A stretch of 64,000 nucleotides of DNA, from NCBI GenBank assembly GCA_950097015.1, contig CATNEN010000024.1, forward strand, positions 1,426,001 through 1,490,000. The letters are read 5' to 3'. Under the pieces are notes generated by a model. That model was not told where the DNA came from, searched no databases, and worked only from the letters and a program-made list of their open reading frames with translations. Source of the DNA: Macrostomum hystrix. Its lineage: Eukaryota; Animalia; Platyhelminthes. Position 1 is the stretch's first letter, and each line of letters opens with the position of its first letter. The translations under genes were made by a program, and so were the position numbers. Shown piece after piece: positions 26,047-46,611 of this stretch.

Positions 26047-28337
26047 TCAGTTCTGCGGCTTGGCCTCAGTCCTCGCGGGCAGGGGTGAGCACAGCTGCTC
26101 AGCCAGGCAGTTTCTGTAGTGCAGGTCGAACTGCGCCAGCCCGGCAGAAGCCAGCGACTCAACTGACGGTGTTCGCGACAGCTCCGGCTGCTCAGGCGCA
26201 ATGGTCGGCTGGTCCCGCCGCTGACGACGCTGCTGCTGACGCTGTCGGAGTCTTCGGCGACGGGCCAGCAGGACTAGGAGGGTGACGGCCACTGCGGCCA
26301 CAAGCAGGCCCAGCGAGACGGTGGTGACTCCGGTCACCAGAATGACCGCGTCGCTGGAGAAACTCGACCGGCTGATCGGGAGCCGGGCAGCCGGGCGACG
26401 CTGGTGATGAAGCAGCAGCTGAGAAAGCGCTGCAGTAACGGCTGCCTGTCCACCGTGTGGCAGAGTGACCGCTGCGGAGCTGGCCCGATCTGCGGCTGCA
26501 GTAGTCGGTGCGGCGGAGGCTTTCAGTGGGTTTGACAAGTCTGTCGCTGACGTTGGCGATGTTATAGCACCGGTGGCAACTGCAGGGATTGGCAGTCTCG
26601 TAGGCGCCCGGCCGCCTGCAGGTGGGCATCGGAAATCCAGAGGAGTGACGCATGAAATAAGAAAAACTTATGTTAACCAAGATCATGATGATCGTGACGA
26701 ATGTTTTTAATAGTCAATATGATGGGCGTGGGGTTACAGGTGTGATTACCCTGGGGTTACAGGTGTGATGACCCTGGGGTTACAGGTGTGATGACCCTGG
26801 GGTTACAGGTGTGATGACCCTGGGGTTACAGGTGTGATGACCCTGGGGTTACAGGTGTGCTAGTGGCTCACCAGCAGCAGGCGGCAGGGTGGGCAGCCTC
26901 TCTGCCAAATTGCTGTTGCACCAGGAGCCGGAGCAGCACAGCAGGAAGGCTCCGTCAGAGTCAGTCGCCGGCCAAGTCCGCAATCGGCATGCGACTTCCT
27001 CGACAGCGTCCATGACACAGCCCTTCTCCAACGGCTCAAGCGAGCCGCCATTGAACAGCTTCAACCGGCTGTAGCAGAGCCGGGGAGATCGGCAGATGTC
27101 TGCGCCGGCGGCGATGCAGTCGGCGGTTGTGCAGGCGCAGGTCACGGGTTCGAGTCCTGGTGATGCAATAAGAAAAATGGAGTAAATACCTTTGTTAGAT
27201 AGCATACGAGCGTAGAGAGAAGATGGGCAGGTTGCACCCAAGTGCTTAAAGCTTCGTGCTTCTGACTGAACGGTCGGGAGTTCGAATCACAGCAGCCTTA
27301 AAGAAATAATGTGTCCTTGAGCAAAAAACTAATTTTCCAATTGATTCAGTTTATCCAGCTGTATTTATCACTGTATCAATGTATCAATGCCTCAATCTAT
27401 GGAACTAAACATGGAAATACCCTGAGAAGTATAGATTAGAAAGGAGAGTTGAAGAGAAAGAGAGAGAAATAAATATCGGCATCGCGAAAGAAGCGAGAGA
27501 AACTCAAGAAGAAACTACGCCGACTTCTCATTCCCTACTCTCACAGGGCCGCGAGAGTCAGCCCACCCGCCCGCGCTTCTTCTGGCCTTCCGCTCAGCGG
27601 ATGAGGCCGCGGCCTCCGCCGCCGCTTTCTGGCCGAGCCCCTTCAGCGTCCTGCTTGTGCCTTCTTCCCTTTCTTTAGTTGGGAGGCCTAAATGCCGCAG
27701 AAGTCTCTTGGCTATAATGCAACTCAATTCAAAGCAGCAGAGTCTCAACTCTCAGAAAGGAGAGAGGCGAGAGAGAGGACCGATGCAGTTCAGTTCACTC
27801 CAGGCCCTTTATACCCAGTCCGCAGGTGTAAGCCACGGATTCCAGCCTCTGTCACTCAGCCCGGATTAATTCGGCAGTCAAAACCTAAAAATTGTCCGCT
27901 TGATTATAATCACGGAGCATAGTCAGCAGAGCATGCATAGAAGGAGCAGGAACCAGACGATATGCTCTCTTGACACCCCGTCTACACAGTTCCGTGTTAT
28001 GCAGTTTTGTCACTGGCCCAGGAAACTGTTTTCTGGCCGGTTGCACCTGGGCCAGGTAGCTGGGGGAGGGGGTAAGGAAATCTCCACGCGGTCCATCTGC
28101 TAGCTGACGGAAACTGAGGCGCTGCTGTTCAGTTCACACTCAAACTAAACTCTGACAGCTGACTTTCGTGACTTCAAAGTCTTGAAGTATTAAACACTTA
28201 CCGAGCCCTGCAGATGAGCTGCTGTCAATGCAAACTGCCGCACAGATTATGCCAACGATGATTAGCAGGTGTAGCGAGTTGGTGGAATAGTAGTTTGAGA
28301 CTGGCAGAACTGACTTCATGCTGGATACTGCCGCCAT
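26047..28337 (-). CDS. BAMBI: BAMBI-like TGF-beta type I pseudoreceptor (no kinase domain)
   Basis: Exons 28337-28202 (signal peptide), 27156-26872 and 26615-26047, joined by phase-1 introns. The ectodomain VTCACTTADCIAAG-DICRS-RLCYSRL...PLEKGC...LLCCSGSWCN follows the BAMBI Cys pattern (CxCxxxxC[VI]AxG, CxS, C[FY]SRL, PLxxGC, CCxxxxCN). It is followed by one TM, a basic stop-transfer run and a short tail. Confidence 0.8.
26729..26858. repeat. Minisatellite, 23-bp unit ggggttacaggtgtgatgaccct, about 5.5 copies (BAMBI intron 2)
   Basis: Begins about 12 nt after the donor on the minus strand. Confidence 0.9.
27240..27365 (+). mobile_element. tRNA-headed SINE fragment
   Basis: B-box GGGAGTTCGAATC, then gtgtccttgagcaa...ttcagtttatccagctgta, which is related to the other SINE copies. 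Confidence 0.55.
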
Positions 28338-28871: not shown

Positions 28872-29317
28872 GATGACCATCTGTTGGGGTGGTAGACTCA
28901 CTGAATTACTATCTGTTGGGGTGGTAGACTCACTGAATTACCATCTGTTGGGGTGGTAGACATACTCAATGACCATCTGTTGGGGTGGTAGACTCACTGA
29001 ATGACCATCTGTTGGGGTGGTAGACTCACTGAATGACCATCTGTTGGGGTGGTAGACTCACTGAATGACCATCTGTTGGGGTGGTAGACTCACTGAATGA
29101 CCATCTGTTGGGGTGGTAGACTCACTGAATGACCATCTGTTGGGGTGGTAGACATACTCAATGACCATCTGTTGGGGTGGTAGACATACTCAATGACCAT
29201 ATGTTGGGGTGGTAGACTCACTGAACGACCATCTGTTGGGGTGGTAGACTCACTGAATGACCATCTGTTGGGGTGGTAGACTCACTGAATGACCATCTGT
29301 TGGGGTGGTAGACTCAC
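28872..29317. repeat. Minisatellite, 32-bp unit gaatgaccatctgttggggtggtagactcact, about 14 copies
   Basis: Tandem array. Confidence 0.9.
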
Positions 29318-30820
29318 AGAAATAGATTTGGCCTTTGGCATTTGTCACAGAATTGTCAAGAGATTTCGATTTACTTTACACTTTGAACAGGAAGACTTGT
29401 TTTCAGCAGAAATACCTTGTCACTCAAGCGAGTTGTATTTTTGTGAGTGGCCTTCGTTGGCCATAGACAAGTCAGGTAAACTCTAGTTCAGATGTACTTT
29501 TCGTGAAAATTTGCATGTCCCTTATTGCATCAAGCATCTAACCAATCCTATTCTCTTTCTACAGTCTACACCCCGGCCCCCTGTCGTCTGCCTGCTCCGT
29601 CCACGTTTTCTATTATCGATTTTCCGCGTCGCGCTAACCCCTTAGTCTGGCCCAGCCCTCTCCATTCTCTATCCCCTTTACAAATCGATAGCTGTTAACC
29701 CTCCTCAGGGTTTTCACACCCTCCTTTTCTCTCCGCTGTCCCTTTATCTCATGCTTGCGTTATAGAATAAACAAAGGCTCCTGTCTAGGCTTATGTTGTT
29801 TTAGGAGCCGTACGTACTGTACGGAGGCGTTTCACACAGCCGAAATTTCAAGTCGAACCACACTATCTTTCTTAGCATCGAAATTTCACAACGCCGAAAT
29901 ATCAAAATATCAACGCCTGAACGTCGAATTGCTATATAGTGATAGCAGAAAAATCACAAATTCTGAAACTCTTGATCTGCAATCTTTCCGTACGATTCGA
30001 CGTAGTGAATTAGTCGTACAGCTTTCGTAAAATAATTTGAGCTCCTATCTCGCCAGTGTAAATAACAGCACATTAGTTTAAACTTAACATTCTGTTTAGT
30101 TAACATAAACGTAAGCTTTATAGAACGGGTAATTAGTAATTTTCGTGTTGTCCTCTTTGATTTACATTCAATTCGTCCAGTCATTTATATTACAATACCT
30201 TAAAGGATACTAGCGCTAACTTGCTCAACGAGAACCTCAAGTACCCCGCCAGTCGGTTATATCAGAGCCGTGGATTTCAGCCACGTCCTGTCACGCTCCG
30301 TCATTTGATTGAACATTTTATCGACGCCGACTTTTAGAAACTTTGCGTAGCTAGGCGAGACTAAAAAACCGGACATTGTAAAATGAGTACCATCAGTGGG
30401 ACACTTAACTGGGACACTTTAGCGGTACTTTGTGAATTAAGTAAAATACTGCCGGACTTTTTAGTGCATTTCATACTCTTGTTAAGTGTAAAATTACATC
30501 CATTTTTTGCTTTTCTTCTACGTCTTGGCTAAAAATAGATTTGTCTAGATACTACGGATGCAACATGACAGTACCGCCTAGATTAGTAATACAACTGACA
30601 GTCTAGATTTGTATTACTGCATACACGGATAGTAAGTAGTACATTTTTCGGATCAGTCTTGGCATTCTTATAAAAAGAATTTCAGAGACTAATAACTAGA
30701 ATATCTACTGCAAGTAGCGAGGTGCGCCAGAAAAACTAGTTTCTTAATTTTCATTTGCAACTGTTGTAACAGTCGTCAGTCGTCATTGAGCTCTGAGCTC
30801 CTCGGCAGTCAGTAGGAGAG

Positions 30821-33800
30821 CTAGAACAGAACAAAGTCCAGCGGCTCCCTGTTCAGGTAGGAGGTCCAGAAAAACTCTAACAGCAGGATGAGCAGGCCAA
30901 TCAGGTACAGAACTGCCGGCACCAGGCAGGACCCGCCGATGCCCTCCAGGCTGATTGGATCGGCCTCGGCTGTGAGCTTGGCGCTTGAGCACTCGGAGCT
31001 GCTGGTTGGGAAGTACTTCAGGCGCAGCATGTCCACCAGGCCATTCTCCTTGGCGCGGCGGATGCTACAGTGTTTTTTAGGGGCGGGAATTAGCTCGATC
31101 CACCCGGTTTGAAGTTTATGCCTCAGCTGATTTTATAGCTAAGCTGATCAACTGGGCTATTGTGAGTAAGTAGATCTGAGTCAACTTAACTTCCGAGTGT
31201 TAATATACGAGTAGATCACGCTATTTTCCCCTGGGGAAAGACCTCGGAGTATTTCAAAATACCCACTTCCTACTTCACGATAGCTCCCAAACAGAATGAC
31301 TGAGTTTCGTGAAAGCCCACTGCGCTTTCACTTTTCACTTTTATAGTGAAACAATGTTAGTTGAAAAAAGAAAAAGTAAAAATTTAATTAATCCATAATA
31401 GTTTAAAATAGTCGCTGACATGGCTACATGATGACATTTTGTGAGCAGAAAAAATATGCCTATATTTGTGATTCTTGCCACCAGACACCCGATAAGAATC
31501 GGTGAATATCTCGACGATGCCAATGTTTTGTGATTCTGGAACTTATTTCGTAGAATAAAAGCACCAAATTTTATACCGCTTAGAAAATTAGAAAATTTTA
31601 TTAGTTCTGGATTTTTTGGCGATTGGTTAAATATTAGGGGAGTTATAGAAAATAAATATGTAATATGCAATATGCACATCGTAATTTGTAAAAGACTGTA
31701 AAAAACTCACACAAATTTCATTGGATCAGCATAGAATGCGTCCTTGGGAATAGTCCAGGCCAGATAGTAGAAGTTGAAATACTCTTTAGCCACGTATACT
31801 TGATTGCAGTACTGGGCAGCAAAGTATAAATTGGACATCTGGTCAGCGATGCAAACTGTGTACGGATTCGATGCCGCCAGGAGCTGAGGATGAGTCAAAG
31901 TTTTTCAGATAGGAAGAGAACGATCTATGATAGGGCGTCAAGGTCAGTGAGGGAGATTCAAGATCGGTCAGGGAGTGTCAAAGCCAGTGCGAGAGGGTCA
32001 AGGTCAGTGAGAGATCATCAAGGTCAGTGAGAGACCATCAAGGTCAGTCAAGGTCAGTGAGACATCAAGGTCAGTGAGAGACCATCAAGGTCAGTCAAGG
32101 TCAGTGAGACATCAAGGTCAGTGAGAGACCATCAAGGTCAGTCAAGGTCAGTGAGAGACCATCAAGGTCAGTCAAGGTCAGTGAGAGACCATCAAGGTCA
32201 GTCAAGGTCAGTGAGAGACCATCAAGGTCAGTCAAGGTCAGTGAGAGACCATCAAGGTCAGTCAAGGTCAGTGAGAGACCATCAAGGTCAGTCAAGGTCA
32301 GTGAGAGACCAAGGTCAATAAAGAGGCGTCAAAGTCCGAGCGACAAGGCCGGTGAGGGAGCGTTAATATTAGTGCGGGAGTGTCAAGGTCAGTGAGGTTC
32401 TCGCAAACGAGGTCACGAGAAATATCATTGCCAACAAGTCTAACCTTCCTGGCGCAGTCCTCATGCGACTGCACCAACACGGACATGGACTTCAGCTGGA
32501 ACATTGGTCCTGAGGTGGCCAGGTCGATGGCAGTCTGAATGTTGGTGCCCCTCGGTACCAGAGCTGTGTACTGTGGCACGGCGACCAGGTCGTCCAGTGT
32601 CTGTATGGGCAGCTTGGTGAAAGAAATGGTCAGGTGAGCGACCAGATCGCCGGTGTAGGCGCCGAAGATGATCACGGTGAACATCCACCAGAATGCAAGC
32701 ACAGTTCTGGGCGACATTGCGAATGGGTAAAAATCCTGTCCTTGCTGCAGAAAGCTGCCAACGGTCGACCAAAGATACTCCTTGTACCAGACCTCGTCAG
32801 CGAATGCGAAGCTCATGCTGAGGTTATAGGCGGAGAATGGACTGAACACGGCTAGCAGGTAGATGATGAGGGGCACGACGAACAGGAAGGCTGCCAACAG
32901 CAGCCAAACCTCTGGTGTCATCGGAGTGAACACATTCCAGATCTTGCTGGCGGGCGGCGGTATTCTGACCAGGATGTTGTTGGATGAGTACAGGTAGTCG
33001 TCCAGGTAGTCCACGACAGCGTAGCGGACGTTCGTTATCGCAAATAGCATCGCCAGATCTGCTTTCTTTCTTGTGGTCGAGTTGAAGCAGCGTTTATTAG
33101 TGTTTTGTCAAACCACTTGACCGAGTTTTAACTATTTGATTATCATGATAACTAAGCTGGACTTAACTTTGGTATTGAAACGAGGTGGTGAGTGTCAGAG
33201 CGGTCTCGCGTCCGACTTTCGCACAAAGGTCTCTGAGCTCGAATCCAAAGCCAGGCCACATGAACTTATGGAGAAGGCTTAGGTGCTTGCCCTGAACCTT
33301 ACGCCTATGAGGGCCTATGCCCATCTTGCCACAGTGAGAGTGTACAGGATGAGATGACGATGTTGACAATAAGGAAGTCAGGGCAGATGAACGCACCCTG
33401 TGTGATTTTGTGCCTGTGTGTCCTCAGGGACTAGCTGAAGGGCAGAATTGCCTCCTCACCAAAATCATGCGTATCAGTGCAAACAGACCACCTACAAATG
33501 CTATTAGGCTCGTAAATAAAATTATTTTTCGAGTAATTTTGCGACCTAGCTCTAGACCTAGCAATCGCTTTACGAGAGCTCTTAGTAAGAAAAATGATCG
33601 ATACTTTGAACTGATAAGAAGTAAGTAGGGTGTGACGGCTAATGACAAAGACCGGCAGTGTGTATTTCGAACAAAACAAGGACAGATTATCGGCGTTAAA
33701 AAAGGTGACAGGAAAATATTATTCCGAGAAAAAAACGAAAAGGCTCAAGCATAAAAAATAATCTCACCCCCTTCTGCAGCTCGCCAATGCAGCCAGAGAA

Positions 33801-36591
33801 CTGCTGGGTCCCGTTGATTGGCGTGCCGAACACTCCGTCAGGTGGCTTCGTGACAATGGTCCTGTGGGAGACAGTGCGGTAAGCCTGATAATTAGGGCTC
33901 ACTACCGAGCTGACACGACCAGACGCTTACGAGAAGTTCAAGTCCGTGCGAAGAATGTGCAACAGGTCCTCTGAATGCCCATCGATCTGGCCGTAAGATT
34001 TGTTCTCAAAGATAGTGTAGGGCCGGAACTGTAATGGGAAATTCGAGTTTCAAGTCGATCAAAGTTTCCGAAACAAATACCGCGGACTCAGTCCAGCAGA
34101 GCTCACGTCAGGTGCGCACACTCGCAGGGTGCGGTTCTTGAAGTCCACGAAGGTGTTGGGAAACGCCAGAGGCTGCTTCTTGTACACAAAGGAGACGCTC
34201 AGTGAGACATTGTCCGGGTGGAACCTGGCGCTCTCGATGCAGCTCAGGGGGTTCGTGTAGAAGTCGTGATGCGTGGCCACGGTCTCAATGTAGGCAGCCA
34301 AGTGCCGAGTGGAGCCGTTGTAGGAGATCAGCGAGTCGAGGGCGTGGAAGCCTGAGGTCTGGAATTGGGATGTCAAGTTGATGAAAGCTGGCAAAAGCAC
34401 ACAGAAATGCCAAGGCTGAGCGTGAGGCTCACATTGGCCAATACTTGAGCAGCCAGCGCCCCGCCAGACCAAGGGCGAGTCGCGCCTCCGTTGCAGCTTG
34501 CGTTGCTGCTGCTGCTGCTGCTAAAGTTGGCGGCATCATGCAGAGCCCTCGCCATGGCCAGGACAGCGTCGATGGTGCGTAGCTCGACCACCTGCGGTTG
34601 TGAGTGAGGCAACTTTCAAGTGATTTAATTTGGGTCTCCCCTAGCGCTTCACAATGCTTTCGGCTCCTGAACTGAGTTCGAATCTTGGCAGGCCCTCACA
34701 CTGACATCCGCCGGCTGGCAGCCCCCGATGACTCTCTGCAGCGCCGCGGGGCAGCCGCCGTTCAGTCGCAGCCGCGAGGGGTCCAACAGGCCGTGACTCG
34801 AACTCCGGACCAGCATGACGTTGGCGGACACATTGGGTGGCAGCAGCGACAGCAGCCGACTGGGTCGGAGGCCCTCGTCCAGAGCCAGCCAGTAATAGTG
34901 GGCCTGGATTGCGTCGGCCAGAACTGCCTGAAAACCAATGAGAAGGATCTCATTTTAGATATTGCCGTAGACTTGAGCGACATGCATGCTGAGCGTGCTT
35001 CAAGGTCACCGGCTCTGATTGGCTGAAAATGGTCTGCGCAGGCGGCTACGAGCGTACAACCGCGCTATAAAGAGCAATGACTATGAGTCGCGAGCAGGAA
35101 ATGAGTCACCGATTAAGACAACCAGGTAATAATAGCACAAAGTGAAAAAGTGTGGAGTTTCAAAGGAAAAAAACGACAGACCAACGTCTATAATGAGACT
35201 CACTGACCTCTTTGATCAGGTCGTACACAGCCTCGGGTGCGGCCATAACTACATTGAACCGGATTTGCTTCTTGATGGAGCCAGTGAGAATCCTGGACAG
35301 GTTGGCGGTTGGAGAGTCCATCTGGAAGCTGACGACAGCGATGCCCGCAGACGACAGGCGGTTCTGCAGCGACTGCACGAGGCTCTGGTCTGCAAGTCCA
35401 GGAGACGGTTTACGGTTGTCAAAGAGGCAATCAAGCAGCAGACGATTGTAGATCAGAAACAAAAAGCAACAAAGTTTTAAATACTAGCATTCGCACCCTG
35501 CTTCGCGTCGAAGAACAGAGACACGAGGCCGGCTGAGTAAGACTGCAGCACGGACACGACGGCTTGTTGGTGAGCGACGGGTTGCACATCGCCAATGAAT
35601 GTGAACTCTGCGGGACAGGACAGAGCTAGTTGATGAGCTGCTTGAGTCCATCAGGCACTCTACTCACGCCAGTCACGGTGGGGTCCATCTGGCACACACA
35701 CAGTGCTCACACACACTGCTTGGATGGGTCCGTCAGGCACACACACACTGCTCACACACCAGTCTCCGAGGCGTCCATCAGGCACACACAAACCAGTCTC
35801 GGAGGCATCCATCAGGCACACACACTGCTTGGATGGGTCCGTCAGGCACACAGACACTGCTCACACACCAGTCTCGGAGGCGTCCATCAGGCACAAACAA
35901 GCCAGTCTCGGAGGCATCCATCAGGCACACACACTGCTCACACACCAGTCTCCGAGGCGTCCATCAGGCACACACAAACCAGTCTCGGAGGTGTCCATCA
36001 GGCACACACACTGCTCACACACCAGTCTCGGAGGTGTCCATCAGGCACACACACACAGCCCACACACCAGTCTCGGAGGCGTCCATCAGGCACACACACA
36101 CAGCCCACACACCAGTCTCGGAGGCGTCCATCTGGCACAGCTGTCCAGCAGGTACAAAGATGGCCGGCAACCGCAGCGACTTTGCTAGGCGGAGCACCTG
36201 GGTGCCGAGGGCGCAGCTGCCGACGCCCAGCAGGCCGTGGAAGCCTCCGGAATTGCAGACTGGAATCAGTTTTGAGATTAAATATGGTCTGAGAGTCCCG
36301 TGAAATATGGGATGTGGGATTATTTTGGGAGAATAGGATCCCAAACTCACATAGGCTGGTTACGGACACACAGTCTGGCACCGGCAGCACCTGGCAGGTG
36401 AGCGGGTCGGTCTTGCTCAATCCGGGGAACACCAGCGGGTCCTGGTTCACAAGTCGGTCGACGACCCGCTGAACAAGTCCAGGCGTCAGCAGCCCGGGCT
36501 CTGCCAGGAGGGCGACTCGCAGAGCATTGACATCTCCCGGCAGCAGCAGCAGCAGGAGCAGCAATACAGGTAAAAGCAGAGGTGCCTGCAT
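30821..36591 (-). CDS. Ionotropic glutamate receptor-like subunit, copy A (ATD-S1-M1-P-M3-S2-M4), about 847 aa, 12 exons
   Basis: Exons 36591-36351, 36259-36113, 35607-35497, 35389-35208, 34927-34706, 34591-34433, 34358-34107, 34028-33931, 33861-33768, 33065-32445, 31883-31711 and 31064-30821. All are GT-AG with matching phases. Motifs: VTSLFCN (ATD, cf. AMPA-type VTNAFC), DGVFG...FSGCIGEL, ITNVRYAVVDY, GSFLQQG, WWMFTVIIFGAYTGDLVAHL and M4 ISLEGIGG. Confidence 0.92.
31940..32330. repeat. Minisatellite, 30-bp unit ggtcagtgagagaccatcaaggtcagtcaa (iGluR-A intron 10)
   Basis: Tandem array, absent from the corresponding intron of copy B. Confidence 0.9.
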
Positions 36592-37010
36592 ATCAAGGAT
36601 TGATCGACAGGTTGTGAAGTTTTCGGGTACAGCATCTGGCAGCGCAGAAGCCCACTTTGAATGCGAGAGCTTTTATAAGCAAATCGGCACCCATGTGGGT
36701 CTCGCTAGAGATGATTGGCCCAGCTGAGCAGTATGGCCTTTTTTCTGCACGCCTAAAGCGGTGAAAAATGGAAATCTGATCCAACAGGCTGACCAAATGT
36801 CTGGCCTCACAACAATCGACTTATCGAACTATTGAGGACTCGAATCGAAGCTAGAAATGCTCAATTAGTCTGAGCAATGAGCTGATCAATGCGCGATCAG
36901 TTACACTGGTCCAGGCACAATATCACAAGCTTGATTACTGCTAATTAGTACTAGTTCAGGTAAACCTAGAATTTACTGCTCATCTCTACGCTATTGTTGC
37001 TGATTAATCA
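34078..37010. repeat. Near-identical segmental duplicate of 41339-44253 (promoter through exon 7 of the iGluR, including introns)
   Basis: Offset is 7261 with apparently identical sequence over 34078-35700. Differences elsewhere are a few SNPs, a 3-bp indel, a ~35-bp indel and minisatellite copy number. Confidence 0.95.
35690..36135. repeat. Minisatellite (40-45-bp units) spanning the exon 2/intron 2 junction of iGluR-A
   Basis: The minus-strand unit ...gatggacgcctccgagactg|gtgtgt contains the exon end plus the donor. Confidence 0.9.
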
Positions 37011-37260
37011 AATATTTAAATGCTCGACTTATTTTCATTCAGCTGGCGGCTGGTAATTAAAGAATTATTTGTCAATAAACACTAATTGACGCGTTGACAA
37101 CCAGCGAGATCTATTGTAACTTGAACTCTGTACAAATGTATTTCGATTTCAGCTCTCACCCTTTTTTTCCATCAAAACAGGTCAAGCAATGCTATTGTTC
37201 AGGTTTTAAGAGTATGTGTATAGTGCCAAAGTAAGTGAAAAAAAAACATAGGAACTTGTG

Positions 37261-38400
37261 AGCTAAAAGCTTCCATTCTTTCAGCTGATTAGCTAAAAGC
37301 TTCCATTCCTTCAGTTGATTAGCTAAAAGCTTCCATTCCTTCAGTTGATTAGCTAAAAGCTTCCATTCCTTCAGTTGATTAGCTAAAAGCTTCCATTCCT
37401 TCAGTTGATTAGCTAAAAGCTTCCATTCCTTCAGTTGATTAGCTAAAAGCTTCCATTCCTTCAGTTGATTAGCTAAAAGCTTCCATTCCTTCAGTTGATT
37501 AGCTAAAAGCTTCCATTCCTTCAGTTGATTAGCTAAAAGCTTCCATTCCTTCAGTTGATTAGCTAAAAGCTTCCATTCTTTCAGTTCATTAGCTAAAAGC
37601 TTCCATTCCTTCAGTTGATTAGCTAAAAGCTTCCATTCCTTCAGTTGATTAGCTAAAAGCTTCCATTCCTTCAGTTGATTAGCTAAAAGCTTCCATTCCT
37701 TCAGTTGATTAGCTAAAAGCTTCCATTCCTTCAGTTGATTAGCTAAAAGCTTCCATTCCTTCAGTTGATTAGCTAAAAGCTTCCATTCCTTCAGTTGATT
37801 AGCTAAAAGCTTCCATTCCTTCAGTTGATTAGCTAAAAGCTTCCATTCCTTCAGTTGATTAGCTAAAAGCTTCCATTCCTTCAGTTGATTAGCTAAAAGC
37901 TTCCATTCCTTCAGTTGATTAGCTAAAAGCTTCCATTCCTTCAGTTGATTAGCTAAAAGCTTCCATTCCTTCAGTTGATTAGCTAAAAGCTTCCATTCTT
38001 TCAGCTGATTAGCTAAAAGCTTCCATTCCTTCAGTTGATTAGCTAAAAGCTTCCATTCCTTCAGTTGATTAGCTAAAAGCTTCCATTCCTTCAGTTGATT
38101 AGCTAAAAGCTTCCATTCCTTCAGTTGATTAGCTAAAAGCTTCCATTCCTTCAGTTGATTAGCTAAAAGCTTCTATTCCTTCAGTTGATTAGCTAAAAGC
38201 TTCCATTCCTTCAGTTGATTAGCTAAAAGCTTCCATTCTTTCAGCTGATTAGCTAAAAGCTTCCATTCCTTCAGTTGATTAGCTAAAAGCTTCCATTCCT
38301 TCAGTTGATTAGCTAAAAGCTTCCATTCTTTCAGCTGATTAGCTAAAAGCTTCCATTCCTTCAGTTGATTAGCTAAAAGCTTCCATTCCTTCAGTTGGTT
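37261..38400. repeat. Minisatellite, 30-bp unit agctaaaagcttccattccttcagttgatt, about 38 copies
   Basis: Near-perfect tandem array between the two iGluR copies. Confidence 0.95.
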
Positions 38401-38606
38401 AGCAAATGTGAACTTCTACCGCGTTGCTAGGTGCGTTGCTAGGTGTGTTTGGAGCCTGAATTAGCTGTTTCATATTGGATAGAAAAGTTGTAATCCACGG
38501 AGATTCTATTCTACCTGGACCGTTGCAAGTGCAAATATATAAGTTTATAATAATTCACAACTAAGACCTGGGTCCGATATTCTGGGCCCTTACAATAATA
38601 CCTCCA

Positions 38607-38960
38607 GATATTCAGGTGTCTCAGACTCTCGCCACCTTCGGATATTCAGGTGTCTCAGACTCTCGCCACCTTCGGATATTCAGGTGTCTCAGACTCTCGC
38701 CACCTTCGGATATTCAGGTGTCTCAGACTCTCGCCACCTTCGGATATTCAGGTGTCTCAGACTCTCGCCACCTTCGGATATTCAGGTGTCTCAGACTCTC
38801 GCCACCTTCGGATATTCAGGTGTCTCAGACTCTCGCCACCTTCGGATATTCAGGTGTCTCAGACTCTCGCCACCTTCGGATATTCAGGTGTCTCAGACTC
38901 TCGCCACCTTCGGATATTCAGGTGTCTCAGACTCTCAACACATTCGGATGTTCAGGTGTT
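38607..38960. repeat. Minisatellite, 34-bp unit cttcggatattcaggtgtctcagactctcgccac, about 10 copies
   Basis: Near-perfect tandem array. Confidence 0.95.
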
Positions 38961-39092
38961 TTTACCTCCACCTCTAACTCCACATCCGGATGCTCAGGGA
39001 CCTAATGCTCGCTTGTGATCTATCCCCAGTCCTTCAGTCTTTAGTCGTCAGTCATCATTGAGCTCTGAGCTCCTCGGCAGTCAGTAGGAGAG

Positions 39093-42000
39093 CTAGAACA
39101 GAACAAAGTCCAGCGGCTCCCTGTTCAGGCAGAAGGTCCAGAAAAACTCTAACAGCAGGATGAGCAGGCCAATCAGGTACAGAACTGCCGGCACCAGGCA
39201 GGACCCGCCGATGCCCTCCAGGCTGATTGGATCGGCCTCGGCTGTGAGCTTGGCGCTTGAGCACTCGGAGCTGCTGGTTGGGAAGTACTTCAGGCGCAGC
39301 ATGTCCACCAGGCCATTCTCCTTGGCGCGGCGGATGCTGCGGTGAAGTTTGGAGTTTGCGCTGAATCGAAATTTTTTAGAAGGCAAGAATGAGAAGAGAG
39401 TAGGGAATTCGATAGATTTGTAGGAATAAAAATAGGAAACGAATTGGGATAACAGGTACGGAAGTTATAGAGTTGGGGTAGAGACAGTAGACTGTGAAGA
39501 ATAAGGATATCGGAAAGGTAGATAGGAAGCAGAAAGTTCTCAGGGAGCAGTGTTCTCAGGCCATGAGTGCTGCGTGTCACCAAAGAAAACAAGAAATTCA
39601 TTTAAAATCGTAAATTATATTCTTTTAAAAGTGATTTGCCTTTTAACAGGTAAGCAATCGATTTGTTTGAGATAGTGAAACAATCATGGGGAAGACCTGA
39701 CAGAGGAAAACGTGGGATCAATGAGCCAGCCTAGGCGAGTCCACACCAGTTTTGCAGCCAATCAGGCAGTGGGGGCTCACACAAGGTTCATGGCGTCAGC
39801 AAAGAAGGCGTCCCTTGGCACAGTCCAGGCCAGGAAGTAGAAGTTGAAGTACTCTTCGGCCAGATAAACTTTGTCGCAGAACTGGGCGGCGAAGTACTGA
39901 TTAGACATCTGGTCCGCGATGCACACCGTGTACGGGTTAGTCGAGGCGATCAGCTGAAAATCATGCAGAAGCCTGAAGTAATCCCAAATCTGGGCGCCAA
40001 ATCCCACCCATATTTCTACTACAGCTGATGCTGCGACTCATGTTACAACTGGGTGAACAAGGGCGAACTGAAGCAATGGAGAAAAGTAGTGTTGCTTTAA
40101 GTTCAGCAAACGGGAAGTCTCAAAGGACCTTGAAGGTCGAAGCCGCCCACCTTCAGAGCGCAGTCCTCATGCGACTGCACCAACACGGACATGGACTTCA
40201 GCTGGAACATTGGTCCTGAGGTGGCCAGGTCGATGGCAGTCTGAATGTTGGTGCCCCTCGGTACCAGAGCTGTGTACTGTGGCACGGCGACCAGGTCATC
40301 CAGTGTCTGTATGGGCAGCTTGGTGATCGAAGTGGCCAAGTGAGCCGTCAGGTCGCCGGTGTAGGCGCCGAAGATGATCACGGTGAACATCCACCAGAAC
40401 ACCAGGACAGTTCTTGGTGACATTGCGAACGGATAAAAATCCTGTCCCTGCTGCAGGAAGCTGCCCATTGTTGACCAGACGTACTCCTTGTACCAGACCT
40501 CATCGGAAAATGCGAAGCTGAGCTTCAGGTTCCAGGCGGAGAATGGACTGAACACGGCTAGCAGGTAGATGATGAGGGGCACGATGAACAGGAAGGCTGC
40601 CAACAGCAGCCAAACCTCTGGTGTCATCGGAGTGAACACATTCCAGATCTTGCTGGCGGGCGGCGGTATTCTGACCAGGATGTTGTTGGATGAGTACAGG
40701 TAGTCGTCCAGGTAGTCCACGACAGCGTAGCGGACGTTCGTGACAGCGAAAACCATGCCGAGGTCAGAGCGCTGAACGGGAGCGGAAATCGGAGCAATTC
40801 ACAGAATGATGGATGCCACTGGGACTCTGAGTTCGGGCTTGCACTTTTGTCTTAGTTGTGAAGTGACGTTCATGGGATGATGTGGCCATCAGATGAAAGG
40901 CGAACTGGACTGGACTGGACTGACCAAACTGGACTGTACTGTACTGTACAGGAGTGGACAGGACCGTGGATAATTAAAGTTCACAGCTTCTAACTCACTC
41001 CTTTCTGCAGCTCGCCGATGCAGCCGGAGAACTCCATGGTCCCGTTGATAGGGGTGCCGAACACCCCATCGGGTGGTTTGAGAACAATGGTACTGCAAGG
41101 GCCAATAGCTTCTTCGTATGACCAGTGTTCAAAAGTTTATTTCAGGTAAAAAGCAATAATAATACTTCAGTAAGAACTGACGAGAAATTGAGCGCCTTTC
41201 GCACCACACTGAGCAGCTCCTCAGCGTGCCCAGTCACCTTTCCGTAGGCATTGTTGTCATAGATCACGTACGGCCGAACCTGTATGTAAAGTGTTCTTTG
41301 GTTGTAACATGATCGAGCTTCAGGTGAAGAGTCCCGAATACCGCGGACTCAGTCCAGCAGAGCTCACGTCAGGTGCGCACACTCGCAGGGTGCGGTTCTT
41401 GAAGTCCACGAAGGTGTTGGGAAACGCCAGAGGCTGCTTCTTGTACACAAAGGAGACGCTCAGTGAGACATTGTCCGGGTGGAACCTGGCGCTCTCGATG
41501 CAGCTCAGGGGGTTCGTGTAGAAGTCGTGATGCGTGGCCACGGTCTCAATGTAGGCAGCCAAGTGCCGAGTGGAGCCGTTGTAGGAGATCAGCGAGTCGA
41601 GGGCGTGGAAGCCTGAGGTCTGGAATTGGGATGTCAAGTTGATGAAAGCTGGCAAAAGCACACAGAAATGCCAAGGCTGAGCGTGAGGCTCACATTGGCC
41701 AATACTTGAGCAGCCAGCGCCCCGCCAGACCAAGGGCGAGTCGCGCCTCCGTTGCAGCTTGCGTTGCTGCTGCTGCTGCTGCTAAAGTTGGCGGCATCAT
41801 GCAGAGCCCTCGCCATGGCCAGGACAGCGTCGATGGTGCGTAGCTCGACCACCTGCGGTTGTGAGTGAGGCAACTTTCAAGTGATTTAATTTGGGTCTCC
41901 CCTAGCGCTTCACAATGCTTTCGGCTCCTGAACTGAGTTCGAATCTTGGCAGGCCCTCACACTGACATCCGCCGGCTGGCAGCCCCCGATGACTCTCTGC

Positions 42001-43808
42001 AGCGCCGCGGGGCAGCCGCCGTTCAGTCGCAGCCGCGAGGGGTCCAACAGGCCGTGACTCGAACTCCGGACCAGCATGACGTTGGCGGACACATTGGGTG
42101 GCAGCAGCGACAGCAGCCGACTGGGTCGGAGGCCCTCGTCCAGAGCCAGCCAGTAATAGTGGGCCTGGATTGCGTCGGCCAGAACTGCCTGAAAACCAAT
42201 GAGAAGGATCTCATTTTAGATATTGCCGTAGACTTGAGCGACATGCATGCTGAGCGTGCTTCAAGGTCACCGGCTCTGATTGGCTGAAAATGGTCTGCGC
42301 AGGCGGCTACGAGCGTACAACCGCGCTATAAAGAGCAATGACTATGAGTCGCGAGCAGGAAATGAGTCACCGATTAAGACAACCAGGTAATAATAGCACA
42401 AAGTGAAAAAGTGTGGAGTTTCAAAGGAAAAAAACGACAGACCAACGTCTATAATGAGACTCACTGACCTCTTTGATCAGGTCGTACACAGCCTCGGGTG
42501 CGGCCATAACTACATTGAACCGGATTTGCTTCTTGATGGAGCCAGTGAGAATCCTGGACAGGTTGGCGGTTGGAGAGTCCATCTGGAAGCTGACGACAGC
42601 GATGCCCGCAGACGACAGGCGGTTCTGCAGCGACTGCACGAGGCTCTGGTCTGCAAGTCCAGGAGACGGTTTACGGTTGTCAAAGAGGCAATCAAGCAGC
42701 AGACGATTGTAGATCAGAAACAAAAAGCAACAAAGTTTTAAATACTAGCATTCGCACCCTGCTTCGCGTCGAAGAACAGAGACACGAGGCCGGCTGAGTA
42801 AGACTGCAGCACGGACACGACGGCTTGTTGGTGAGCGACGGGTTGCACATCGCCAATGAATGTGAACTCTGCGGGACAGGACAGAGCTAGTTGATGAGCT
42901 GCTTGAGTCCATCAGGCACTCTACTCACGCCAGTCACGGTGGGGTCCATCTGGCACACACACAGTGCTCACACACACTGCTTGGATGGGTCCGTCAGGCA
43001 CACAGACACTGCTCACACACCAGTCTCGGAGGCGTCCATCTGGCACACACAAACCAGTCTCGGAGGCATCCATCAGGCACACACACTGCTTGGATGGGTC
43101 CGTCAGGCACACAGACACTGCTCACACACCAGTCTCGGAGGCGTCCATCAGGCACACACAAGCCAGTCTCGGAGGCATCCATCAGGCACACACACTGCTT
43201 GGATGGGTCCGTCAGGCACACAGACACTGCTCACACACCAGTCTCGGAGGCGTCCATCTGGCACACACACTGCTCACACACCAGTCTCGGAGGCGTCCAT
43301 CAGGCACACACACACAGCCCACACACCAGTCTCGGAGGCGTCCATCTGGCACAGCTGTCCAGCAGGTACAAAGATGGCCGGCAACCGCAGCGACTTTGCT
43401 AGGCGGAGCACCTGGGTGCCGAGGGCGCAGCTGCCGACGCCCAGCAGGCCGTGGAAGCCTCCGGAATTGCAGACTGGAATCAGTTTTGAGATTAAATATG
43501 GTCTGAGAGTCCCGTGAAATATGGGATGTGGGATTATTTTGGGAGAATAGGATCCCTAACTCACATAGGCTGGTTACGGACACACAGTCTGGCACCGGCA
43601 GCACCTGGCAGGTGAGCGGGTCGGTCTTGCTCAATCCGGGGAACACCAGCGGGTCCTGGTTCACAAGTCGGTCGACGACCCGCTGAACAAGTCCAGGCGT
43701 CAGCAGCCCGGGCTCTGCCAGGAGGGCGATTCGCAGAGCATTGACATCTCCCGATGGCAGCAGCAGCAGCAGGAGCAGCAATACAGGTAAAAGCAGAGGT
43801 GCCTGCAT
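39093..43808 (-). CDS. Ionotropic glutamate receptor-like subunit, copy B, about 848 aa, 12 exons
   Basis: Exons 43808-43565, 43473-43327, 42868-42758, 42650-42469, 42188-41967, 41852-41694, 41619-41368, 41279-41182, 41092-40999, 40771-40151, 39953-39781 and 39336-39093, totalling 2547 nt with no internal stop. The M3 motif reads AYTGDLTAHL. Confidence 0.92.
42950..43350. repeat. Junction-derived minisatellite in iGluR-B intron 2
   Basis: Same family as 35690-36135, with a different unit order and number. Confidence 0.9.
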
Positions 43809-44258
43809 ATCAAGGATTGATTGACAGGTTGTGAAGTTTTCGGGTACAGCATCTGGCAGCGCAGAAGCCCACTTTGAATGCGAGAGCTTTTATAAGCAAA
43901 TTGGCACCCATGTGGGTCTCGCTAGAGATGATTGGCCCAGCTGAGCAGTATGGCCTTTTTTCTGCACGCCTAAAGCGGTGAAAAATAGAAATCTGATCCA
44001 ACAGGCTGACCAAATGTCTGGCCTCACAACAATCGACTTATCGAACTATTGAGGACTTGAACAATAGTGATATCTAGTGATATCTAGGATACGAAATCGA
44101 AACTAGAAATGCTCAATTAGTCTCAGCAATGAGCTGATCAATGCGCGATCAGTTACACTGGTCCAGGCACAATATCACAAGCTTGATTACTGCCAATTAG
44201 TACTAGTTCAGGTAAACCTAGAATTTACTGCTCATATCTACGCTATTGTTGCTCTCAC

Positions 44259-44514
44259 GGTCACGTGTGGCTGACAGACAGTCCTAGGCGCTCAAAATGC
44301 GGCAGGTGAGCGGGTCCGCCACACCTAGGCCTGGGAACACCAGCGGATCCTGGTTCACTCGCTGATCGATGCCAGTTCGCTCAATGAGGCCAGCTTGAGT
44401 CGGCGAAGCTCCTGGCTCGGTCAGCACAGCTAGGCGCAGGGCCCGCACGGCTGCTACTAGCAGCATCAGCTGCAGCAGCCGCAAAGGCAACAGAATTCGC
44501 GGATGCAAAGCCAT
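44259..44514 (-). pseudogene. Orphan exon 1 of a third, more divergent iGluR paralog (in-frame TAG)
   Basis: MALHPRILL...ALRLAVLTEPG...RVNQDPLVFPGLGVADPLTCRILSA*DCLSATRD followed by C|GTGAGA aligns codon-for-codon with the end of exon 1 of copies A and B (TCQVLPVPDCVSVTSL-T|GTGAGT). No downstream exons of its own are visible. Confidence 0.8.
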
Positions 44515-44944
44515 CAGGAGGCAGGGATGAATGAAAAAATTAGCAAGTTTGGACAAATTTCAGCATGCAGGCATTCTATAAGCCTGGCTGATTGACAAGA
44601 ATCAATGCTACCCGGAGACCCGATGTAATTTGCGCAATCTTAATGCGAAACATTATCTGGCCAAAAGTGCCAGGCCCCATATCGATGCCAGCGGGTGCGA
44701 AGGTCACCAGCAGAATCGATTTTCCTCGGTTTCCGAAAGTGCCAAGGGAAGGCAACATTGGCAATTAGACGTAATCCATAGAGCATTTATTGAACTTTCT
44801 CACATTCATTTGCTGCCCCCTAAGGGCATCGTGTAAGCCCGCAATGAACAACTCAATGTTAAGCTTCCCTTTAGCTCAATGGGTGACAGAAAGGATTTGC
44901 GACTTGAGGGATCAGCTGAATGCTATGCGCTCTCTTGCAAGTCA

Positions 44945-45740
44945 TGACCTGAGGATTTGATGGCGGATTTCTGCACGTCATGACCTGAGGACTAGATGGC
45001 TGACTTTGTAGCTCAGGACCTGAGGACTTGATGGCTGACTTTGTAGCTCAGGACCTGAGGACTTGATGGCTGACTTTGTAGCTCAGGACCTGAAGATTTG
45101 ATGGCTGACTTTGTAGCTCAGGACCTGAAGATATGATGGCTGACTTTGTAGCTCAGGACCTGAGGACTTGATGGCTGACTTTGTAGCTCAGGACCTGAGG
45201 ACTTAATGGCTGACTTTGTACATGTAGCGCAGGACCTGAAGATTTGATGGCTGACTTTGTAGCTCAGGACCTGAAGATTTGATGGCTGACTTTGTAGCTC
45301 AGGACCTGAGGACTTGATGGCTGACTTTGTAGCTCAGGACCTGAGGACTTGATGGCTGACTTTGTAGCTCAGGACCTGAAGATTTGATGGCTGACTTTGT
45401 AGCTCAGGACCTGAGGACTTGATGGCTGACTTTGTAGCTCAGGACCTGAGGACTTGATGGCTGACTTTGTAGCTCAGGACCTGAGGACTTGATGGCTGAC
45501 TTTGTAGCTCAGGACCAGAGGACTTGATGGCTGACTTTGTAGCTCAGGACCTGAGGACTTGATGGCTGACTTTGTAGCTCAGGACCTGAAGATTTGATGG
45601 CTGACTTTGTAGCTCAGGACCTGAGGACTTGATGGCTGACTTTGTAGCTCAGGACCTGAAGATTTGATGGCAGACTTTGTAGCTCAGGACCTGAGGACTT
45701 GATGGCTGACTTTGTAGCTCAGGACCAGAGGACTTGATGG
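44945..45740. repeat. Minisatellite, 35-bp unit aggacctgaggacttgatggctgactttgtagctc, about 22 copies
   Basis: Tandem array. Confidence 0.95.
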
Positions 45741-46611
45741 CAGATATCTGTTGCTGACTTATGTACCCCAGGGCCTGAGGCTTTGGAAGCTGGCTTACAG
45801 ACTTGAAGATCGCAAAACTCGTAGAAAGTACTTCAGGAACTAGCTTTGTTTCGATGTGAGATAACGATTCTTAATCGGTTGATGATACAAGGCAATTAAA
45901 TCAGACGAACTTATCATGAGCACATCATCTATTCAGCGTTAAATATCTCCCAGCTAAGCCAGCTGCTTGCGTGAGAGAGACCTTATGATTGTATTTGGTT
46001 GACGCGTTGATAAATAAACAAACAGCGCACAATGAGCAGTGTACACGCGGAGTCCAGAGTAGTCACTAAGTGAGCCTCAAAGTCAGGATTAAATTAAACT
46101 GATAAATAAGTCTTGGAAGCAAGTCTGCTCAAATTGCGAAAAAGAACAACAAAGCAAGCAAAACAAACAAGTAAAAAACTGATAAGAGGGCATGCTAAAA
46201 GTGCATTCCAATACGCACAACACGGAGCAACAAAAGTCAGGTGCAGTAGGTTGCAAAATTGTGACGCATTCACATAAAGCAAGTATGTGATGGTATTGGG
46301 GGCAACACTATTAATACTGCACTGGTCGGTCACATGGGTTTACATTTTTTAATCGATTCGAAATCTTGTGTTGATGTCATATACGGCAACAACTGTATGT
46401 AAAATTCTAAACCAATCGACAAAACATAAATTCACTTCAACTGGTCCGCGCGCGCGCGAAAAAAATACAACGGGCAAGCAGCGGACCTCAATAAAATCAA
46501 ATCTGACCGATAAAAACAGTGCCGACTGTACTTTTGTGCAGGTCAGTCGAAGGAACAGCGAAAGGCGGAAGGCATCCTACCGAAATCAAATCCACTTATT
46601 TAACTTATCCT

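What the first reader, a model, noticed from the sequence alone, without database searches (positions are those of the whole stretch)
30773..44514. iGluR copy B looks like a chimera: A-derived promoter and ATD exons placed into an older paralog whose first exon was orphaned
Seen: B exons 1-7, their introns and upstream DNA (41339-44253) are near-identical to A (34078-37010). In contrast, B exons 8, 9 and 11 are divergent (exon 8 VRPYVIYDNNAYGKVTGHAEELL versus FRPYTIFENKSYGQIDGHSEDLL) and introns 8-11 share no visible similarity. At the distal breakpoint (about 44253) sits a complete exon 1 of a third, divergent paralog with its GTGAGA donor and a premature TAG. Inference: an old tandem paralog C (44514 to 39093) had its intron 1 to intron 7 interval replaced by A's 5' region. 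This created an intact receptor with A's promoter, signal peptide and ATD but C's ligand-binding and pore exons, a domain swap that could give co-expressed, co-assembling subunits with different ligand properties.
Basis: partly seen in the sequence, partly recalled or inferred. Interest (0 to 1): 0.75.

Follow-up and report, generated by a model that had tools for sequence, protein, structure and literature searches.

The report
Flatworm glutamate-receptor gene with swapped front half
One of two neighbouring glutamate-receptor channel genes in the flatworm Macrostomum hystrix recently had its promoter and front (assembly) domain overwritten by a copy from its neighbour, which left its old first exon stranded upstream; this is a clear but ordinary kind of gene-family recombination that recurs across the family.

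Summary
Two intact iGluR genes lie in tandem on the minus strand: A (ATG 36591, stop 30821) and B (ATG 43808, stop 39093). A 2.9-kb block is near-identical in both (A 34076-37001, B 41337-44253). It holds 410 bp of upstream DNA with a TATA box, all amino-terminal-domain (ATD) exons and their introns.

Downstream exons are old (dS about 0.9-1.7) and their introns cannot be aligned. A complete, divergent exon 1 (44514-44259) sits directly upstream of B's block, with one in-frame TAG and a GTGAGA donor. The A-like block starts 5-6 nt after that donor.

This orphan exon differs from A's exon 1 as much as B's old exons differ from A's (dS 1.45-1.7, dN/dS 0.2-0.25). It is therefore the relic of B's former 5' end.

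It needs three corrections:
- B's 3' half is not purely "C". Three more A/B-identical patches exist: two inside the big exon, and the whole last exon.
- The 5' block has a 1668-bp stretch with no differences, so exchange has recurred.
- At least five other iGluR clusters in this genome show the same near-identical 5' block, in four of them ending at the last ATD exon. The scan had already noted this pattern on another piece of this genome.

Different ligand properties remain untested.

The parts
30821..36591 (-). Gene A, iGluR. My model has 11 exons and 806 aa. Exons: 36591-36351, 35625-35497, 35389-35208, 34927-34700, 34591-34433, 34358-34107, 34028-33931, 33861-33768, 33065-32445, 31883-31711, 31064-30821.
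   Evidence: All introns are GT-AG and the reading frame is open. The big exon matches PF00060 at 5.5e-22. The best solved relative is GluK2, 5.7e-24.
39093..43808 (-). Gene B, iGluR. My model has 11 exons and 807 aa. Exons: 43808-43565, 42886-42758, 42650-42469, 42188-41961, 41852-41694, 41619-41368, 41279-41182, 41092-40999, 40771-40151, 39953-39781, 39336-39093.
   Evidence: All introns are GT-AG and the reading frame is open. Exon lengths equal A's except for +3 nt in exon 1. B is 93% identical to A in amino acids overall.
34076..37001 (-). A's copy of the shared 5' block: 410 bp upstream of the ATG, TATAAAA at 36677-36671, the six ATD exons with their introns, and the first 31 nt of the next intron.
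41337..44253 (-). B's copy of the shared 5' block, with TATAAAA at 43894-43888. 41337-43004 is 100% identical to A 34076-35743.
   Evidence: Only these two copies exist in the 220-Mb genome.
44259..44514 (-). Orphan exon 1 of the old paralog 'C'. It has an ATG, a signal-peptide-like start and one in-frame TAG at 44286-44284. It is in the same phase (1) as exon 1 of A and B.
   Evidence: Sequence. Alignment to A's exon 1 is 68% nt, with dS 1.45-1.72 and dN/dS 0.19-0.25. Its only relatives in the genome are exon 1 of A and of B.
44253..44258 (-). Orphan donor GTGAGA and the distal junction. A-like sequence starts at 44253 (= A 37001), with 1 nt of microhomology.
44574..44580 (-). TATAGAA, within GCTTATAGAA, 66 nt upstream of the orphan ATG. 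It may be a relic of C's TATA box; A and B have GCTTATAAAA at -86.
   Evidence: The upstream regions are otherwise no more alike than shuffles, so this is only a hint.
32828..33035 (-). Conversion patch P1 in A's big exon (= B 40534-40741). It has 1 mismatch in 208 nt and is flanked by 18-50% divergence.
   Evidence: The identical runs of 156 and 51 nt were reached in 0 of 20,000 permutations.
32452..32620 (-). Conversion patch P2 in A's big exon (= B 40158-40326), with 1 mismatch in 169 nt.
30771..31066 (-). Conversion patch P3: A's last exon plus about 50 nt of 3' UTR (= B 39043-39338). It has 3 differences in 296 nt, none of them synonymous changes in the coding part. It starts at the acceptor site.
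41182..41279 (-).
39781..39953 (-).
37261..38959 (.). Unrelated minisatellites (30-bp and 34-bp units) that fill the spacer between A's upstream end and B's 3' end.

Best explanation
A and the ancestor of B ("C") are old tandem paralogs of a Macrostomum iGluR. Recently, a 2.9-kb copy of A's 5' end replaced C's DNA from intron 1 (+6) to just past the last ATD exon. The copy runs from 410 bp upstream of A's ATG to 31 nt into the intron after the last ATD exon.

The proximal end was resolved by homology in or next to the last ATD exon. The distal end was joined illegitimately, with 1 nt of microhomology. This stranded C's promoter and exon 1 upstream, where the exon has since picked up one stop codon.

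B is now an intact gene. It has A's core promoter, A's signal peptide and A's ATD (one extra Ser and one V-to-I change), and a partly old ligand-binding and channel half.

Short, homology-limited gene conversions between A and B continued or came earlier. These are two patches in the big exon, the whole last exon, and a re-homogenised 1.67-kb part of the 5' block.

What is shown: the structure, the ages, the mosaic and the intact frames. What is inferred: the direction (A to B), the one-step mechanism, and any effect on co-expression or co-assembly.
For: - Identity map and exact junctions.
- Per-exon dS: 0 in the five ATD exons after exon 1 (0.014 in exon 1), 1.69, 0.88, 0.26 (a mosaic exon), 1.68, then 0.
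- Orphan exon against A's exon 1: dS 1.45-1.72, dN/dS 0.19-0.25, frame kept apart from one TAG.
- Identical runs of 207, 156 and 140 nt were never reached in 20,000 permutations; the same holds for third codon positions alone.
- Introns of the old part are unalignable.
- Only two copies of the block and three exon-1 relatives exist in the genome, and the next paralogs are only 50-65% identical in the big exon.
- Both genes have open GT-AG models.
- The two blocks differ by indels and about 1% substitutions in their distal third, so they were assembled as separate copies.
- Other iGluR clusters show the same kind of 5'-block exchange.
Against: - There is no cDNA, read-level or sister-species evidence here, so the splice sites, B's expression and the assembly of this 13-kb stretch are unverified.
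- The assembly is canu PacBio with Arrow and Pilon polishing (PMC10468722). Polishing could have erased small differences, which might account for the 0-difference sub-block.
- The A-to-B direction rests on parsimony alone: the relic lies upstream of B.
- A two-step route (unequal crossover, then deletion) gives the same end product.
- dS near 1.5-1.7 is close to saturation and rests on 23-70 synonymous sites per exon, so "same age" is approximate.
Confidence: 0.65

Rival explanations
1. Two-step origin. An unequal crossover between A and C, at the end of the ATD exons, made a three-gene array: C, then the A/C chimera, then A. A later deletion of about 7 kb removed C from its intron 1 to 410 bp upstream of the chimera.
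For: Unequal crossing-over is the usual way such arrays grow (Croset et al. 2010, PMC2924276). The proximal boundary lies in homologous sequence. The end product is identical to what is seen.
Against: It needs two events, one of them an illegitimate deletion that happens to end 5 nt after a splice donor. No trace of the duplicated intergenic spacer is left upstream of 44253.
Confidence: 0.15
2. The orphan exon is an older, unrelated partial duplication or a former alternative first exon. The 5' block is simply kept alike by ordinary gene conversion between A and B.
For: 5' blocks are near-identical in other clusters where I saw no diverged relic. One cluster has a young partial 5' copy 2 kb upstream of a gene (L041 1795-2313). 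The orphan donor is in the same phase as exon 1.
Against: Homologous conversion cannot place a second promoter and exon 1 downstream of an existing exon 1. The block starts 5-6 nt after the orphan donor. The orphan's dS equals that of B's old exons and its dN/dS is 0.2. No such exon lies upstream of A.
Confidence: 0.1
3. A and B are a young whole-gene duplication of the unit 30771-37001. In one copy the middle (ligand-binding and channel exons) was later replaced from a diverged donor.
For: Both ends of the unit are 99-100% identical, and identity stops at both unit ends.
Against: No donor exists: the next paralogs are only 50-65% identical in the big exon. The middle itself holds A/B-identical patches. 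The orphan exon of matching age would be a coincidence. A 2-kb spacer separates the units.
Confidence: 0.05
4. Assembly or polishing artefact: a false tandem duplication of haplotypes, or a chimeric consensus.
For: The authors report separately assembled haplotypes, haplotig purging, and Arrow and Pilon polishing (PMC10468722). There is a stretch of 1668 bp with no difference.
Against: The old parts have dS about 1.7 and introns of different length that cannot be aligned, which is not allelic. The two blocks differ by a 35-bp indel, a 3-bp indel, repeat copy number and about 1% substitutions. The same mosaic is seen in several other clusters on other contigs.
Confidence: 0.05

Closest known systems
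Domain-restricted concerted evolution under selection (protocadherin variable exons, Noonan et al. 2004; RHD/RHCE, Innan 2003), as reviewed by Ohta 2010 (PMC3966226)
   Same: Tandem paralogs in which one part is homogenised by gene conversion while another part stays diverse. The breaks in identity are sharp and include synonymous sites.
   Different: Here the homogenised module is a promoter plus a whole multi-exon domain with its introns. One junction is illegitimate and leaves a relic exon. The family is iGluR, for which I found no such report.
Expansion of insect variant iGluRs (IRs) by non-allelic homologous recombination (Croset et al. 2010, PMC2924276)
   Same: Tandem arrays of divergent iGluR-type receptor genes shaped by ectopic recombination.
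   Different: That work infers whole-gene duplication and retroposition. It does not use the word "chimeric" (0 occurrences) and, in the passages I read, describes no ATD-module exchange. These flatworm genes keep an ATD and their introns.
Vertebrate kainate and AMPA iGluR subunits (GluK2, GluA2)
   Same: The channel exon matches PF00060 and GluK2. The domain order is ATD, then S1, M1-M3, S2, M4. The Arg of S1 aligns with GluK2's ligand-binding Arg.
   Different: The gate motif is AYTGDL(V/T)AHL where vertebrate subunits have SYTANLAAF. Identity is low, and the ATD and S1/S2 Pfam models were not reached exon by exon. The ligand is unknown.

Membership tests
Ionotropic glutamate receptor superfamily | Ligand-gated ion channel transmembrane core (Pfam PF00060) | tested here: met
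   A's big exon scores 78.6 bits, E 5.5e-22, against a cutoff of 30.8. phmmer to GluK2 chains gives 5.7e-24.
Ionotropic glutamate receptor superfamily | Amino-terminal domain of the ANF_receptor / LIVBP type (PF01094) | tested here: inconclusive
   Searched exon by exon only. One exon gives 15.6 bits, E 0.0087, below the 25.4 cutoff, and the others give nothing. The joined model was not sent to any search tool.
Ionotropic glutamate receptor superfamily | S1/S2 ligand-binding domain with the conserved Arg that binds the ligand's carboxylate | tested here: met
   The Arg in ..AITNVRYAVVDY.. aligns with the Arg of GluK2 ..LAITYVREKVIDF.. and is present in both A and B. The short S1 and S2 exons alone gave no hit to solved iGluR structures.
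Ionotropic glutamate receptor superfamily | Canonical SYTANLAAF gate motif in M3 | tested here: not met
A has AYTGDLVAHL and B has AYTGDLTAHL.
Non-allelic (ectopic) gene conversion between tandem paralogs | Sharp switches between near-identity and high divergence that include synonymous sites, beyond what chance gives | tested here: met
   Identical runs of 207, 156 and 140 nt were reached in 0 of 20,000 permutations; third codon positions give the same result. pS is 0 in patches against 0.33-0.67 beside them.
Non-allelic (ectopic) gene conversion between tandem paralogs | Both ends of a tract lie at homologous positions in donor and recipient | tested here: not met
   This is met for the three exon patches. 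For the 5' block, the proximal end is homologous, but the distal end joins A position -410 to C intron 1 position +6. The 5' block is therefore not a simple conversion tract.
Chimeric gene by unequal crossing-over (NAHR) | The chimera shares its whole upstream spacer with the 5' donor, and a parental copy persists | tested here: not met
   Identity stops 410 bp upstream of the ATG. The spacers do not resemble each other. Only exon 1 of the parental copy is left. A further deletion would be needed.
Retrocopy or cDNA-templated conversion | Loss of introns in the copied stretch | tested here: not met
   All five introns inside the 5' block are present and near-identical in both copies.
Alternative first exons (variable-exon cluster) | The upstream exon is spliced to the common exon 2 in transcripts | not testable with these tools
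   The donor is present and in the same phase as exon 1, but there is an in-frame TAG 9 codons before it. No cDNA could be reached.

The most novel reading that the evidence does not exclude
Exchange of the promoter-plus-ATD module between neighbouring iGluR genes is a recurrent, selectively maintained process in Macrostomum. It gives sets of receptors the same regulation and the same assembly domain while part of the ligand-binding domain stays diverse. Gene B is the one case where the replaced 5' end left a datable fossil.
Probability: 0.3. Interest if true: 0.7.

Novelty: new member of a known kind. Interest (0 to 1): 0.45.

Why it matters
The locus gives a dated, base-pair-resolved example of a whole regulatory-plus-domain module being moved between paralogs by one-sided homologous repair. 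The replaced exon survives as an internal clock.

In iGluRs, dimerisation of the ATD is a key step in choosing assembly partners (Zhao et al. 2017, PMC5665649). Genes that share one ATD but differ in part of the ligand-binding domain are therefore natural candidates for co-assembling subunits.

The same 5'-block pattern appears in at least five other clusters. This makes a selective explanation testable in a tractable flatworm that has a good genome and Iso-Seq data.

Tried and rejected
- A third paralog as donor, or as owner of the orphan exon: none in the window or in the genome.
- Sister-species or cDNA evidence: the word-based protein search with B's big exon found only four Macrostomum lignano fragments at 45-66% identity. 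The best of these has no contig on record.
- The short S1 and S2 exons against solved structures: no iGluR hits. My mapping of ligand-contact residues outside the big exon therefore rests on my own reading of motifs.
- Promoter homology between the orphan's upstream DNA and A's: not above shuffles.
- The minisatellites flanking the genes: unrelated to each other, so not part of the duplication.
- The large HMMER search, structure prediction and the protein atlas were not used. The family is not in doubt. The spliced models could only be built inside scripts and were not sent to any search tool.
- Nothing here looked human.
Full report
ORGANISM AND SETTING. The window is contig 24, 1,426,001-1,490,000, of a 220,453,370-bp genome in 42 contigs. 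That is exactly the size and contig number of the Macrostomum hystrix assembly of Wiberg et al. 2023 (PMC10468722). The assembly is canu on PacBio reads, with haplotigs purged and Arrow and Pilon polishing. Nothing here looks human.

THE OBSERVATION. Repeat finding and blastn show two units in tandem on the same strand: A 30771-37001 and B 39043-44253. They share a 2.9-kb block (A 34076-37001 = B 41337-44253). A global alignment of the two copies divides the block into three parts:
- 34076-35743 has no difference over 1668 bp.
- The CA-rich repeat in intron 1 (35744-36060) differs in copy number.
- 36061-37001 has 10 substitutions plus a 3-bp and a 35-bp indel, about 1.1% divergence.

Downstream of the block, only exons align: 83%, 93%, 80% and 99% in blastn. 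The four introns there are no more alike than shuffled sequence (z below 1). The intron that follows the shared block matches only in its first 31 nt.

A tblastn of all exon translations against the window finds only A, B and one extra exon-1-like stretch at 44302-44448.

GENE MODELS. Reading all three frames on the minus strand and choosing GT-AG sites that keep the frame gives 11 exons for each gene. A has 806 aa and B has 807 aa. Both are open, and exon lengths are identical except for +3 nt in B's exon 1. I find six exons in the shared block.

The strong donor GTGAGT at 36350 (phase 1) is the only exon-1 donor that joins exon 2 in frame. The orphan exon has its donor at the homologous place. 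I built the joined models only inside scripts, to check frames and compute substitution rates. I sent them to no search tool; exons were searched one by one, by reference.

The big exon matches Pfam Lig_chan (5.5e-22) and GluK2 structures (5.7e-24). The ATD model was reached only weakly by one exon. The gate motif is AYTGDL(V/T)AHL where SYTANLAAF is usual. These are variant iGluRs with an ATD.

AGES OF THE PARTS. Nei-Gojobori estimates per exon for A against B:

| Exon | dS | Note |
|---|---|---|
| E1-E6 | 0 (0.014 in E1) | shared block |
| E7 | 1.69 | dN 0.38 |
| E8 | 0.88 | |
| E9 | 0.26 | mosaic exon |
| E10 | 1.68 | |
| E11 | 0 | |

E9 (621 nt) is itself a mosaic:
- nt 0-29: 15 mismatches.
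- nt 30-237: 1 mismatch.
- nt 238-444: 37 mismatches.
- nt 445-613: 1 mismatch.
- The last 7 nt: 3 mismatches.

I permuted the 155 mismatch positions over the 1230 nt of E7-E11. This never gave identical runs as long as the observed 207, 156 and 140 nt (0 of 20,000). The same holds for third codon positions alone. So the identity is not protein-level constraint. These are short gene-conversion tracts.

The last-exon tract starts at the acceptor site and ends about 50 nt after the stop. That is what one expects when heteroduplex cannot extend into unalignable intron.

THE ORPHAN EXON. On the minus strand, 44514-44259 reads ATG, a hydrophobic signal-like start, then sequence that aligns with A's exon 1 to its very end (68% nt). 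The frame is kept throughout except for one TAG at 44286-44284. A GTGAGA donor sits at the homologous position, in the same phase.

Against A's exon 1 it has dS 1.45 (all codons) to 1.72 (mature part), dN 0.33-0.36 and dN/dS 0.19-0.25. These values match E7 and E10. The exon is therefore as old as B's old exons and was under purifying selection for most of that time.

The A-like block begins at 44253, five to six nucleotides after the donor's GT, with one shared A as microhomology. In the whole genome this exon has no relatives except exon 1 of A and of B. The 5' block exists only twice. The next iGluR paralogs are 50-65% identical in the big exon.

The shared block carries GCTTATAAAAG 86 nt before the ATG in both genes. 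The orphan has GCTTATAGAA 66 nt before its ATG. Its upstream DNA is otherwise not alignable with A's.

MECHANISM. Ordinary conversion between homologous positions cannot put a second promoter and exon 1 downstream of an existing exon 1. The simplest route is repair of a gap or break in C. One end invaded A at the last ATD exon and copied 2.9 kb towards and past A's promoter. The new strand was then joined to C's intron 1 without homology.

The rest of the intron beyond the proximal junction keeps a faint old similarity (11 of 13 nt, z 2.3), which fits a homologous resolution there. An unequal crossover followed by a deletion gives the same product and cannot be excluded.

Direction A to B is inferred only from the relic lying upstream of B. 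The stretch with no differences, against about 1.1% divergence in the distal third, means either a second, later conversion or polishing that removed small differences.

B's 3' half is not simply "C". The last exon (M4 and tail) is A/B-identical. So is the segment from the end of S1 through M1, and the segment from the end of M3 into the first part of S2.

The stretches that stay old are E7, E8, the start and middle of E9, and E10. By my own reading of iGluR topology (not tested here), E7, E8 and E10 build mostly the upper lobe of the ligand-binding clamshell. The middle of E9 holds the M2 pore loop and most of M3.

The Arg that aligns with GluK2's ligand-binding Arg is the same in both genes. 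So is the Asp at the place of GluA2 E705, which I placed by motif only. Different ligand specificity is possible but has no support yet.

Shared regulation is plausible, because the core promoter is the same. Shared assembly is plausible too: the mature ATD is identical apart from V27I, and ATD dimerisation is a key step controlling iGluR assembly (PMC5665649). Both points are inference.

A FAMILY-WIDE PATTERN. I compared the loci that the genome search had fetched around other iGluR genes. At least five further clusters hold pairs or groups of genes with a near-identical 5' block that includes introns, followed by much older exons.

| Cluster | Genes sharing a 5' block | 5' block identity | Big exon identity |
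|---|---|---|---|
| Contig 34 | 3 | 95.7-99.4% | 88-97% |
| Contig 15 | copies 3 and 4 | 99.9% | 83-92% |
| Contig 15 | copies 1 and 2 | 98.5% | 77-83% |
| Contig 3, 5.83-5.87 Mb | 4 | 96-98% | 72-80% |
| Contig 3, 6.26-6.28 Mb | 2 | 97.7% | 78% |
| Contig 1, inverted pair | 2 | 98% | no blastn match of 80 nt or more |

In all but one pair, the block ends within about 30 nt of the end of the exon homologous to my E6, the last ATD exon. The exception is contig 15 copies 1 and 2, where the boundary lies nearer E5.

Trees make the same point. In the last ATD exon, six genes of the two contig-3 clusters are nearly identical, with terminal branches of at most 0.014. In the big exon, the same genes sit on branches of 0.18-0.39 and do not group. 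Some neighbouring pairs (contig 24 at 5.62 Mb, contig 7) lack the pattern.

One contig-34 gene has a young partial copy of its own 5' end 2 kb upstream.

After I had seen this, a look-up showed that an earlier follow-up in this scan described three neighbouring iGluR genes elsewhere in this genome. Their front domain and last exon had been overwritten by gene conversion. So the scan has found this before on other DNA.

The boundary of B's patch is therefore not a chance breakpoint. It is the place where exchange stops throughout the family. Two causes are possible: the DNA beyond it is too diverged to pair, or selection removes conversions that erase ligand-binding diversity. The second cause is the accepted reading for RHD/RHCE and protocadherin clusters (PMC3966226).

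COMPARISON AND NOVELTY. Ectopic conversion, unequal crossing-over and chimeric paralogs are textbook processes. Domain-restricted homogenisation under selection is known in other families. For iGluR/IR arrays, the literature I could search describes expansion by non-allelic recombination and retroposition (PMC2924276), but no exchange of an ATD module.

I file this as a new member of a known kind. It is a well-resolved recombinant gene with a datable relic, within a family that does this repeatedly.

LIMITS. I had no reads, no cDNA and no sister genome. The protein word search returned only M. lignano fragments, and their contigs are not on record. dS values near 1.5-1.7 are close to saturation and come from few sites.

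Noticed in passing
L041, L042, L011 (contig 34, 2.358-2.382 Mb); L007, L008, L039, L040 (contig 15, 0.10-0.13 Mb); L012, L018, L020, L016 (contig 3, 5.83-5.87 Mb); L015, L023 (contig 3, 6.26-6.28 Mb); L030, L026 (contig 1, 5.66-5.67 Mb): Other iGluR clusters of this genome show the same mosaic. A 5' (ATD) block, introns included, is 96-99.9% identical, while the ligand-binding and channel exons are much older. In all but one pair the block ends within about 30 nt of the last ATD exon. The last exon is also about 96% identical in the contig-34 genes.
   Followed up: partly
L041:1795-2313: A 519-bp partial copy (99%) of the start of a contig-34 iGluR gene lies 2 kb upstream of that gene (L041 3826-4344). 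It holds most of exon 1 and the following DNA but lacks the ATG. This is a second kind of stranded 5' fragment.
   Followed up: partly
window 35708-36139 and 42969-43353: Intron 1 of both genes holds a CA-rich array with nested 45-, 77- and 109-bp periods. Its copy number differs between A and B, and most substitutions inside the shared block lie here.
   Followed up: partly
window 26729-26859, 28873-29321, 32018-32311, 37261-38403, 38600-38959, 44942-45741, 46614-47291: There are many unrelated minisatellites with 23-35-bp units, at 82-99% unit identity, in and around the two genes. One lies inside an intron of A (32018-32311). Strong GC-skew peaks elsewhere in the window (18-20 kb, 24-26 kb, 56-58 kb, 60-62 kb) may be more of the same.
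   Followed up: no
window 32590-32620 (A) and 40296-40326 (B): The M3 gate motif reads AYTGDLVAHL in A and AYTGDLTAHL in B, where iGluRs usually have SYTANLAAF.
   Followed up: partly
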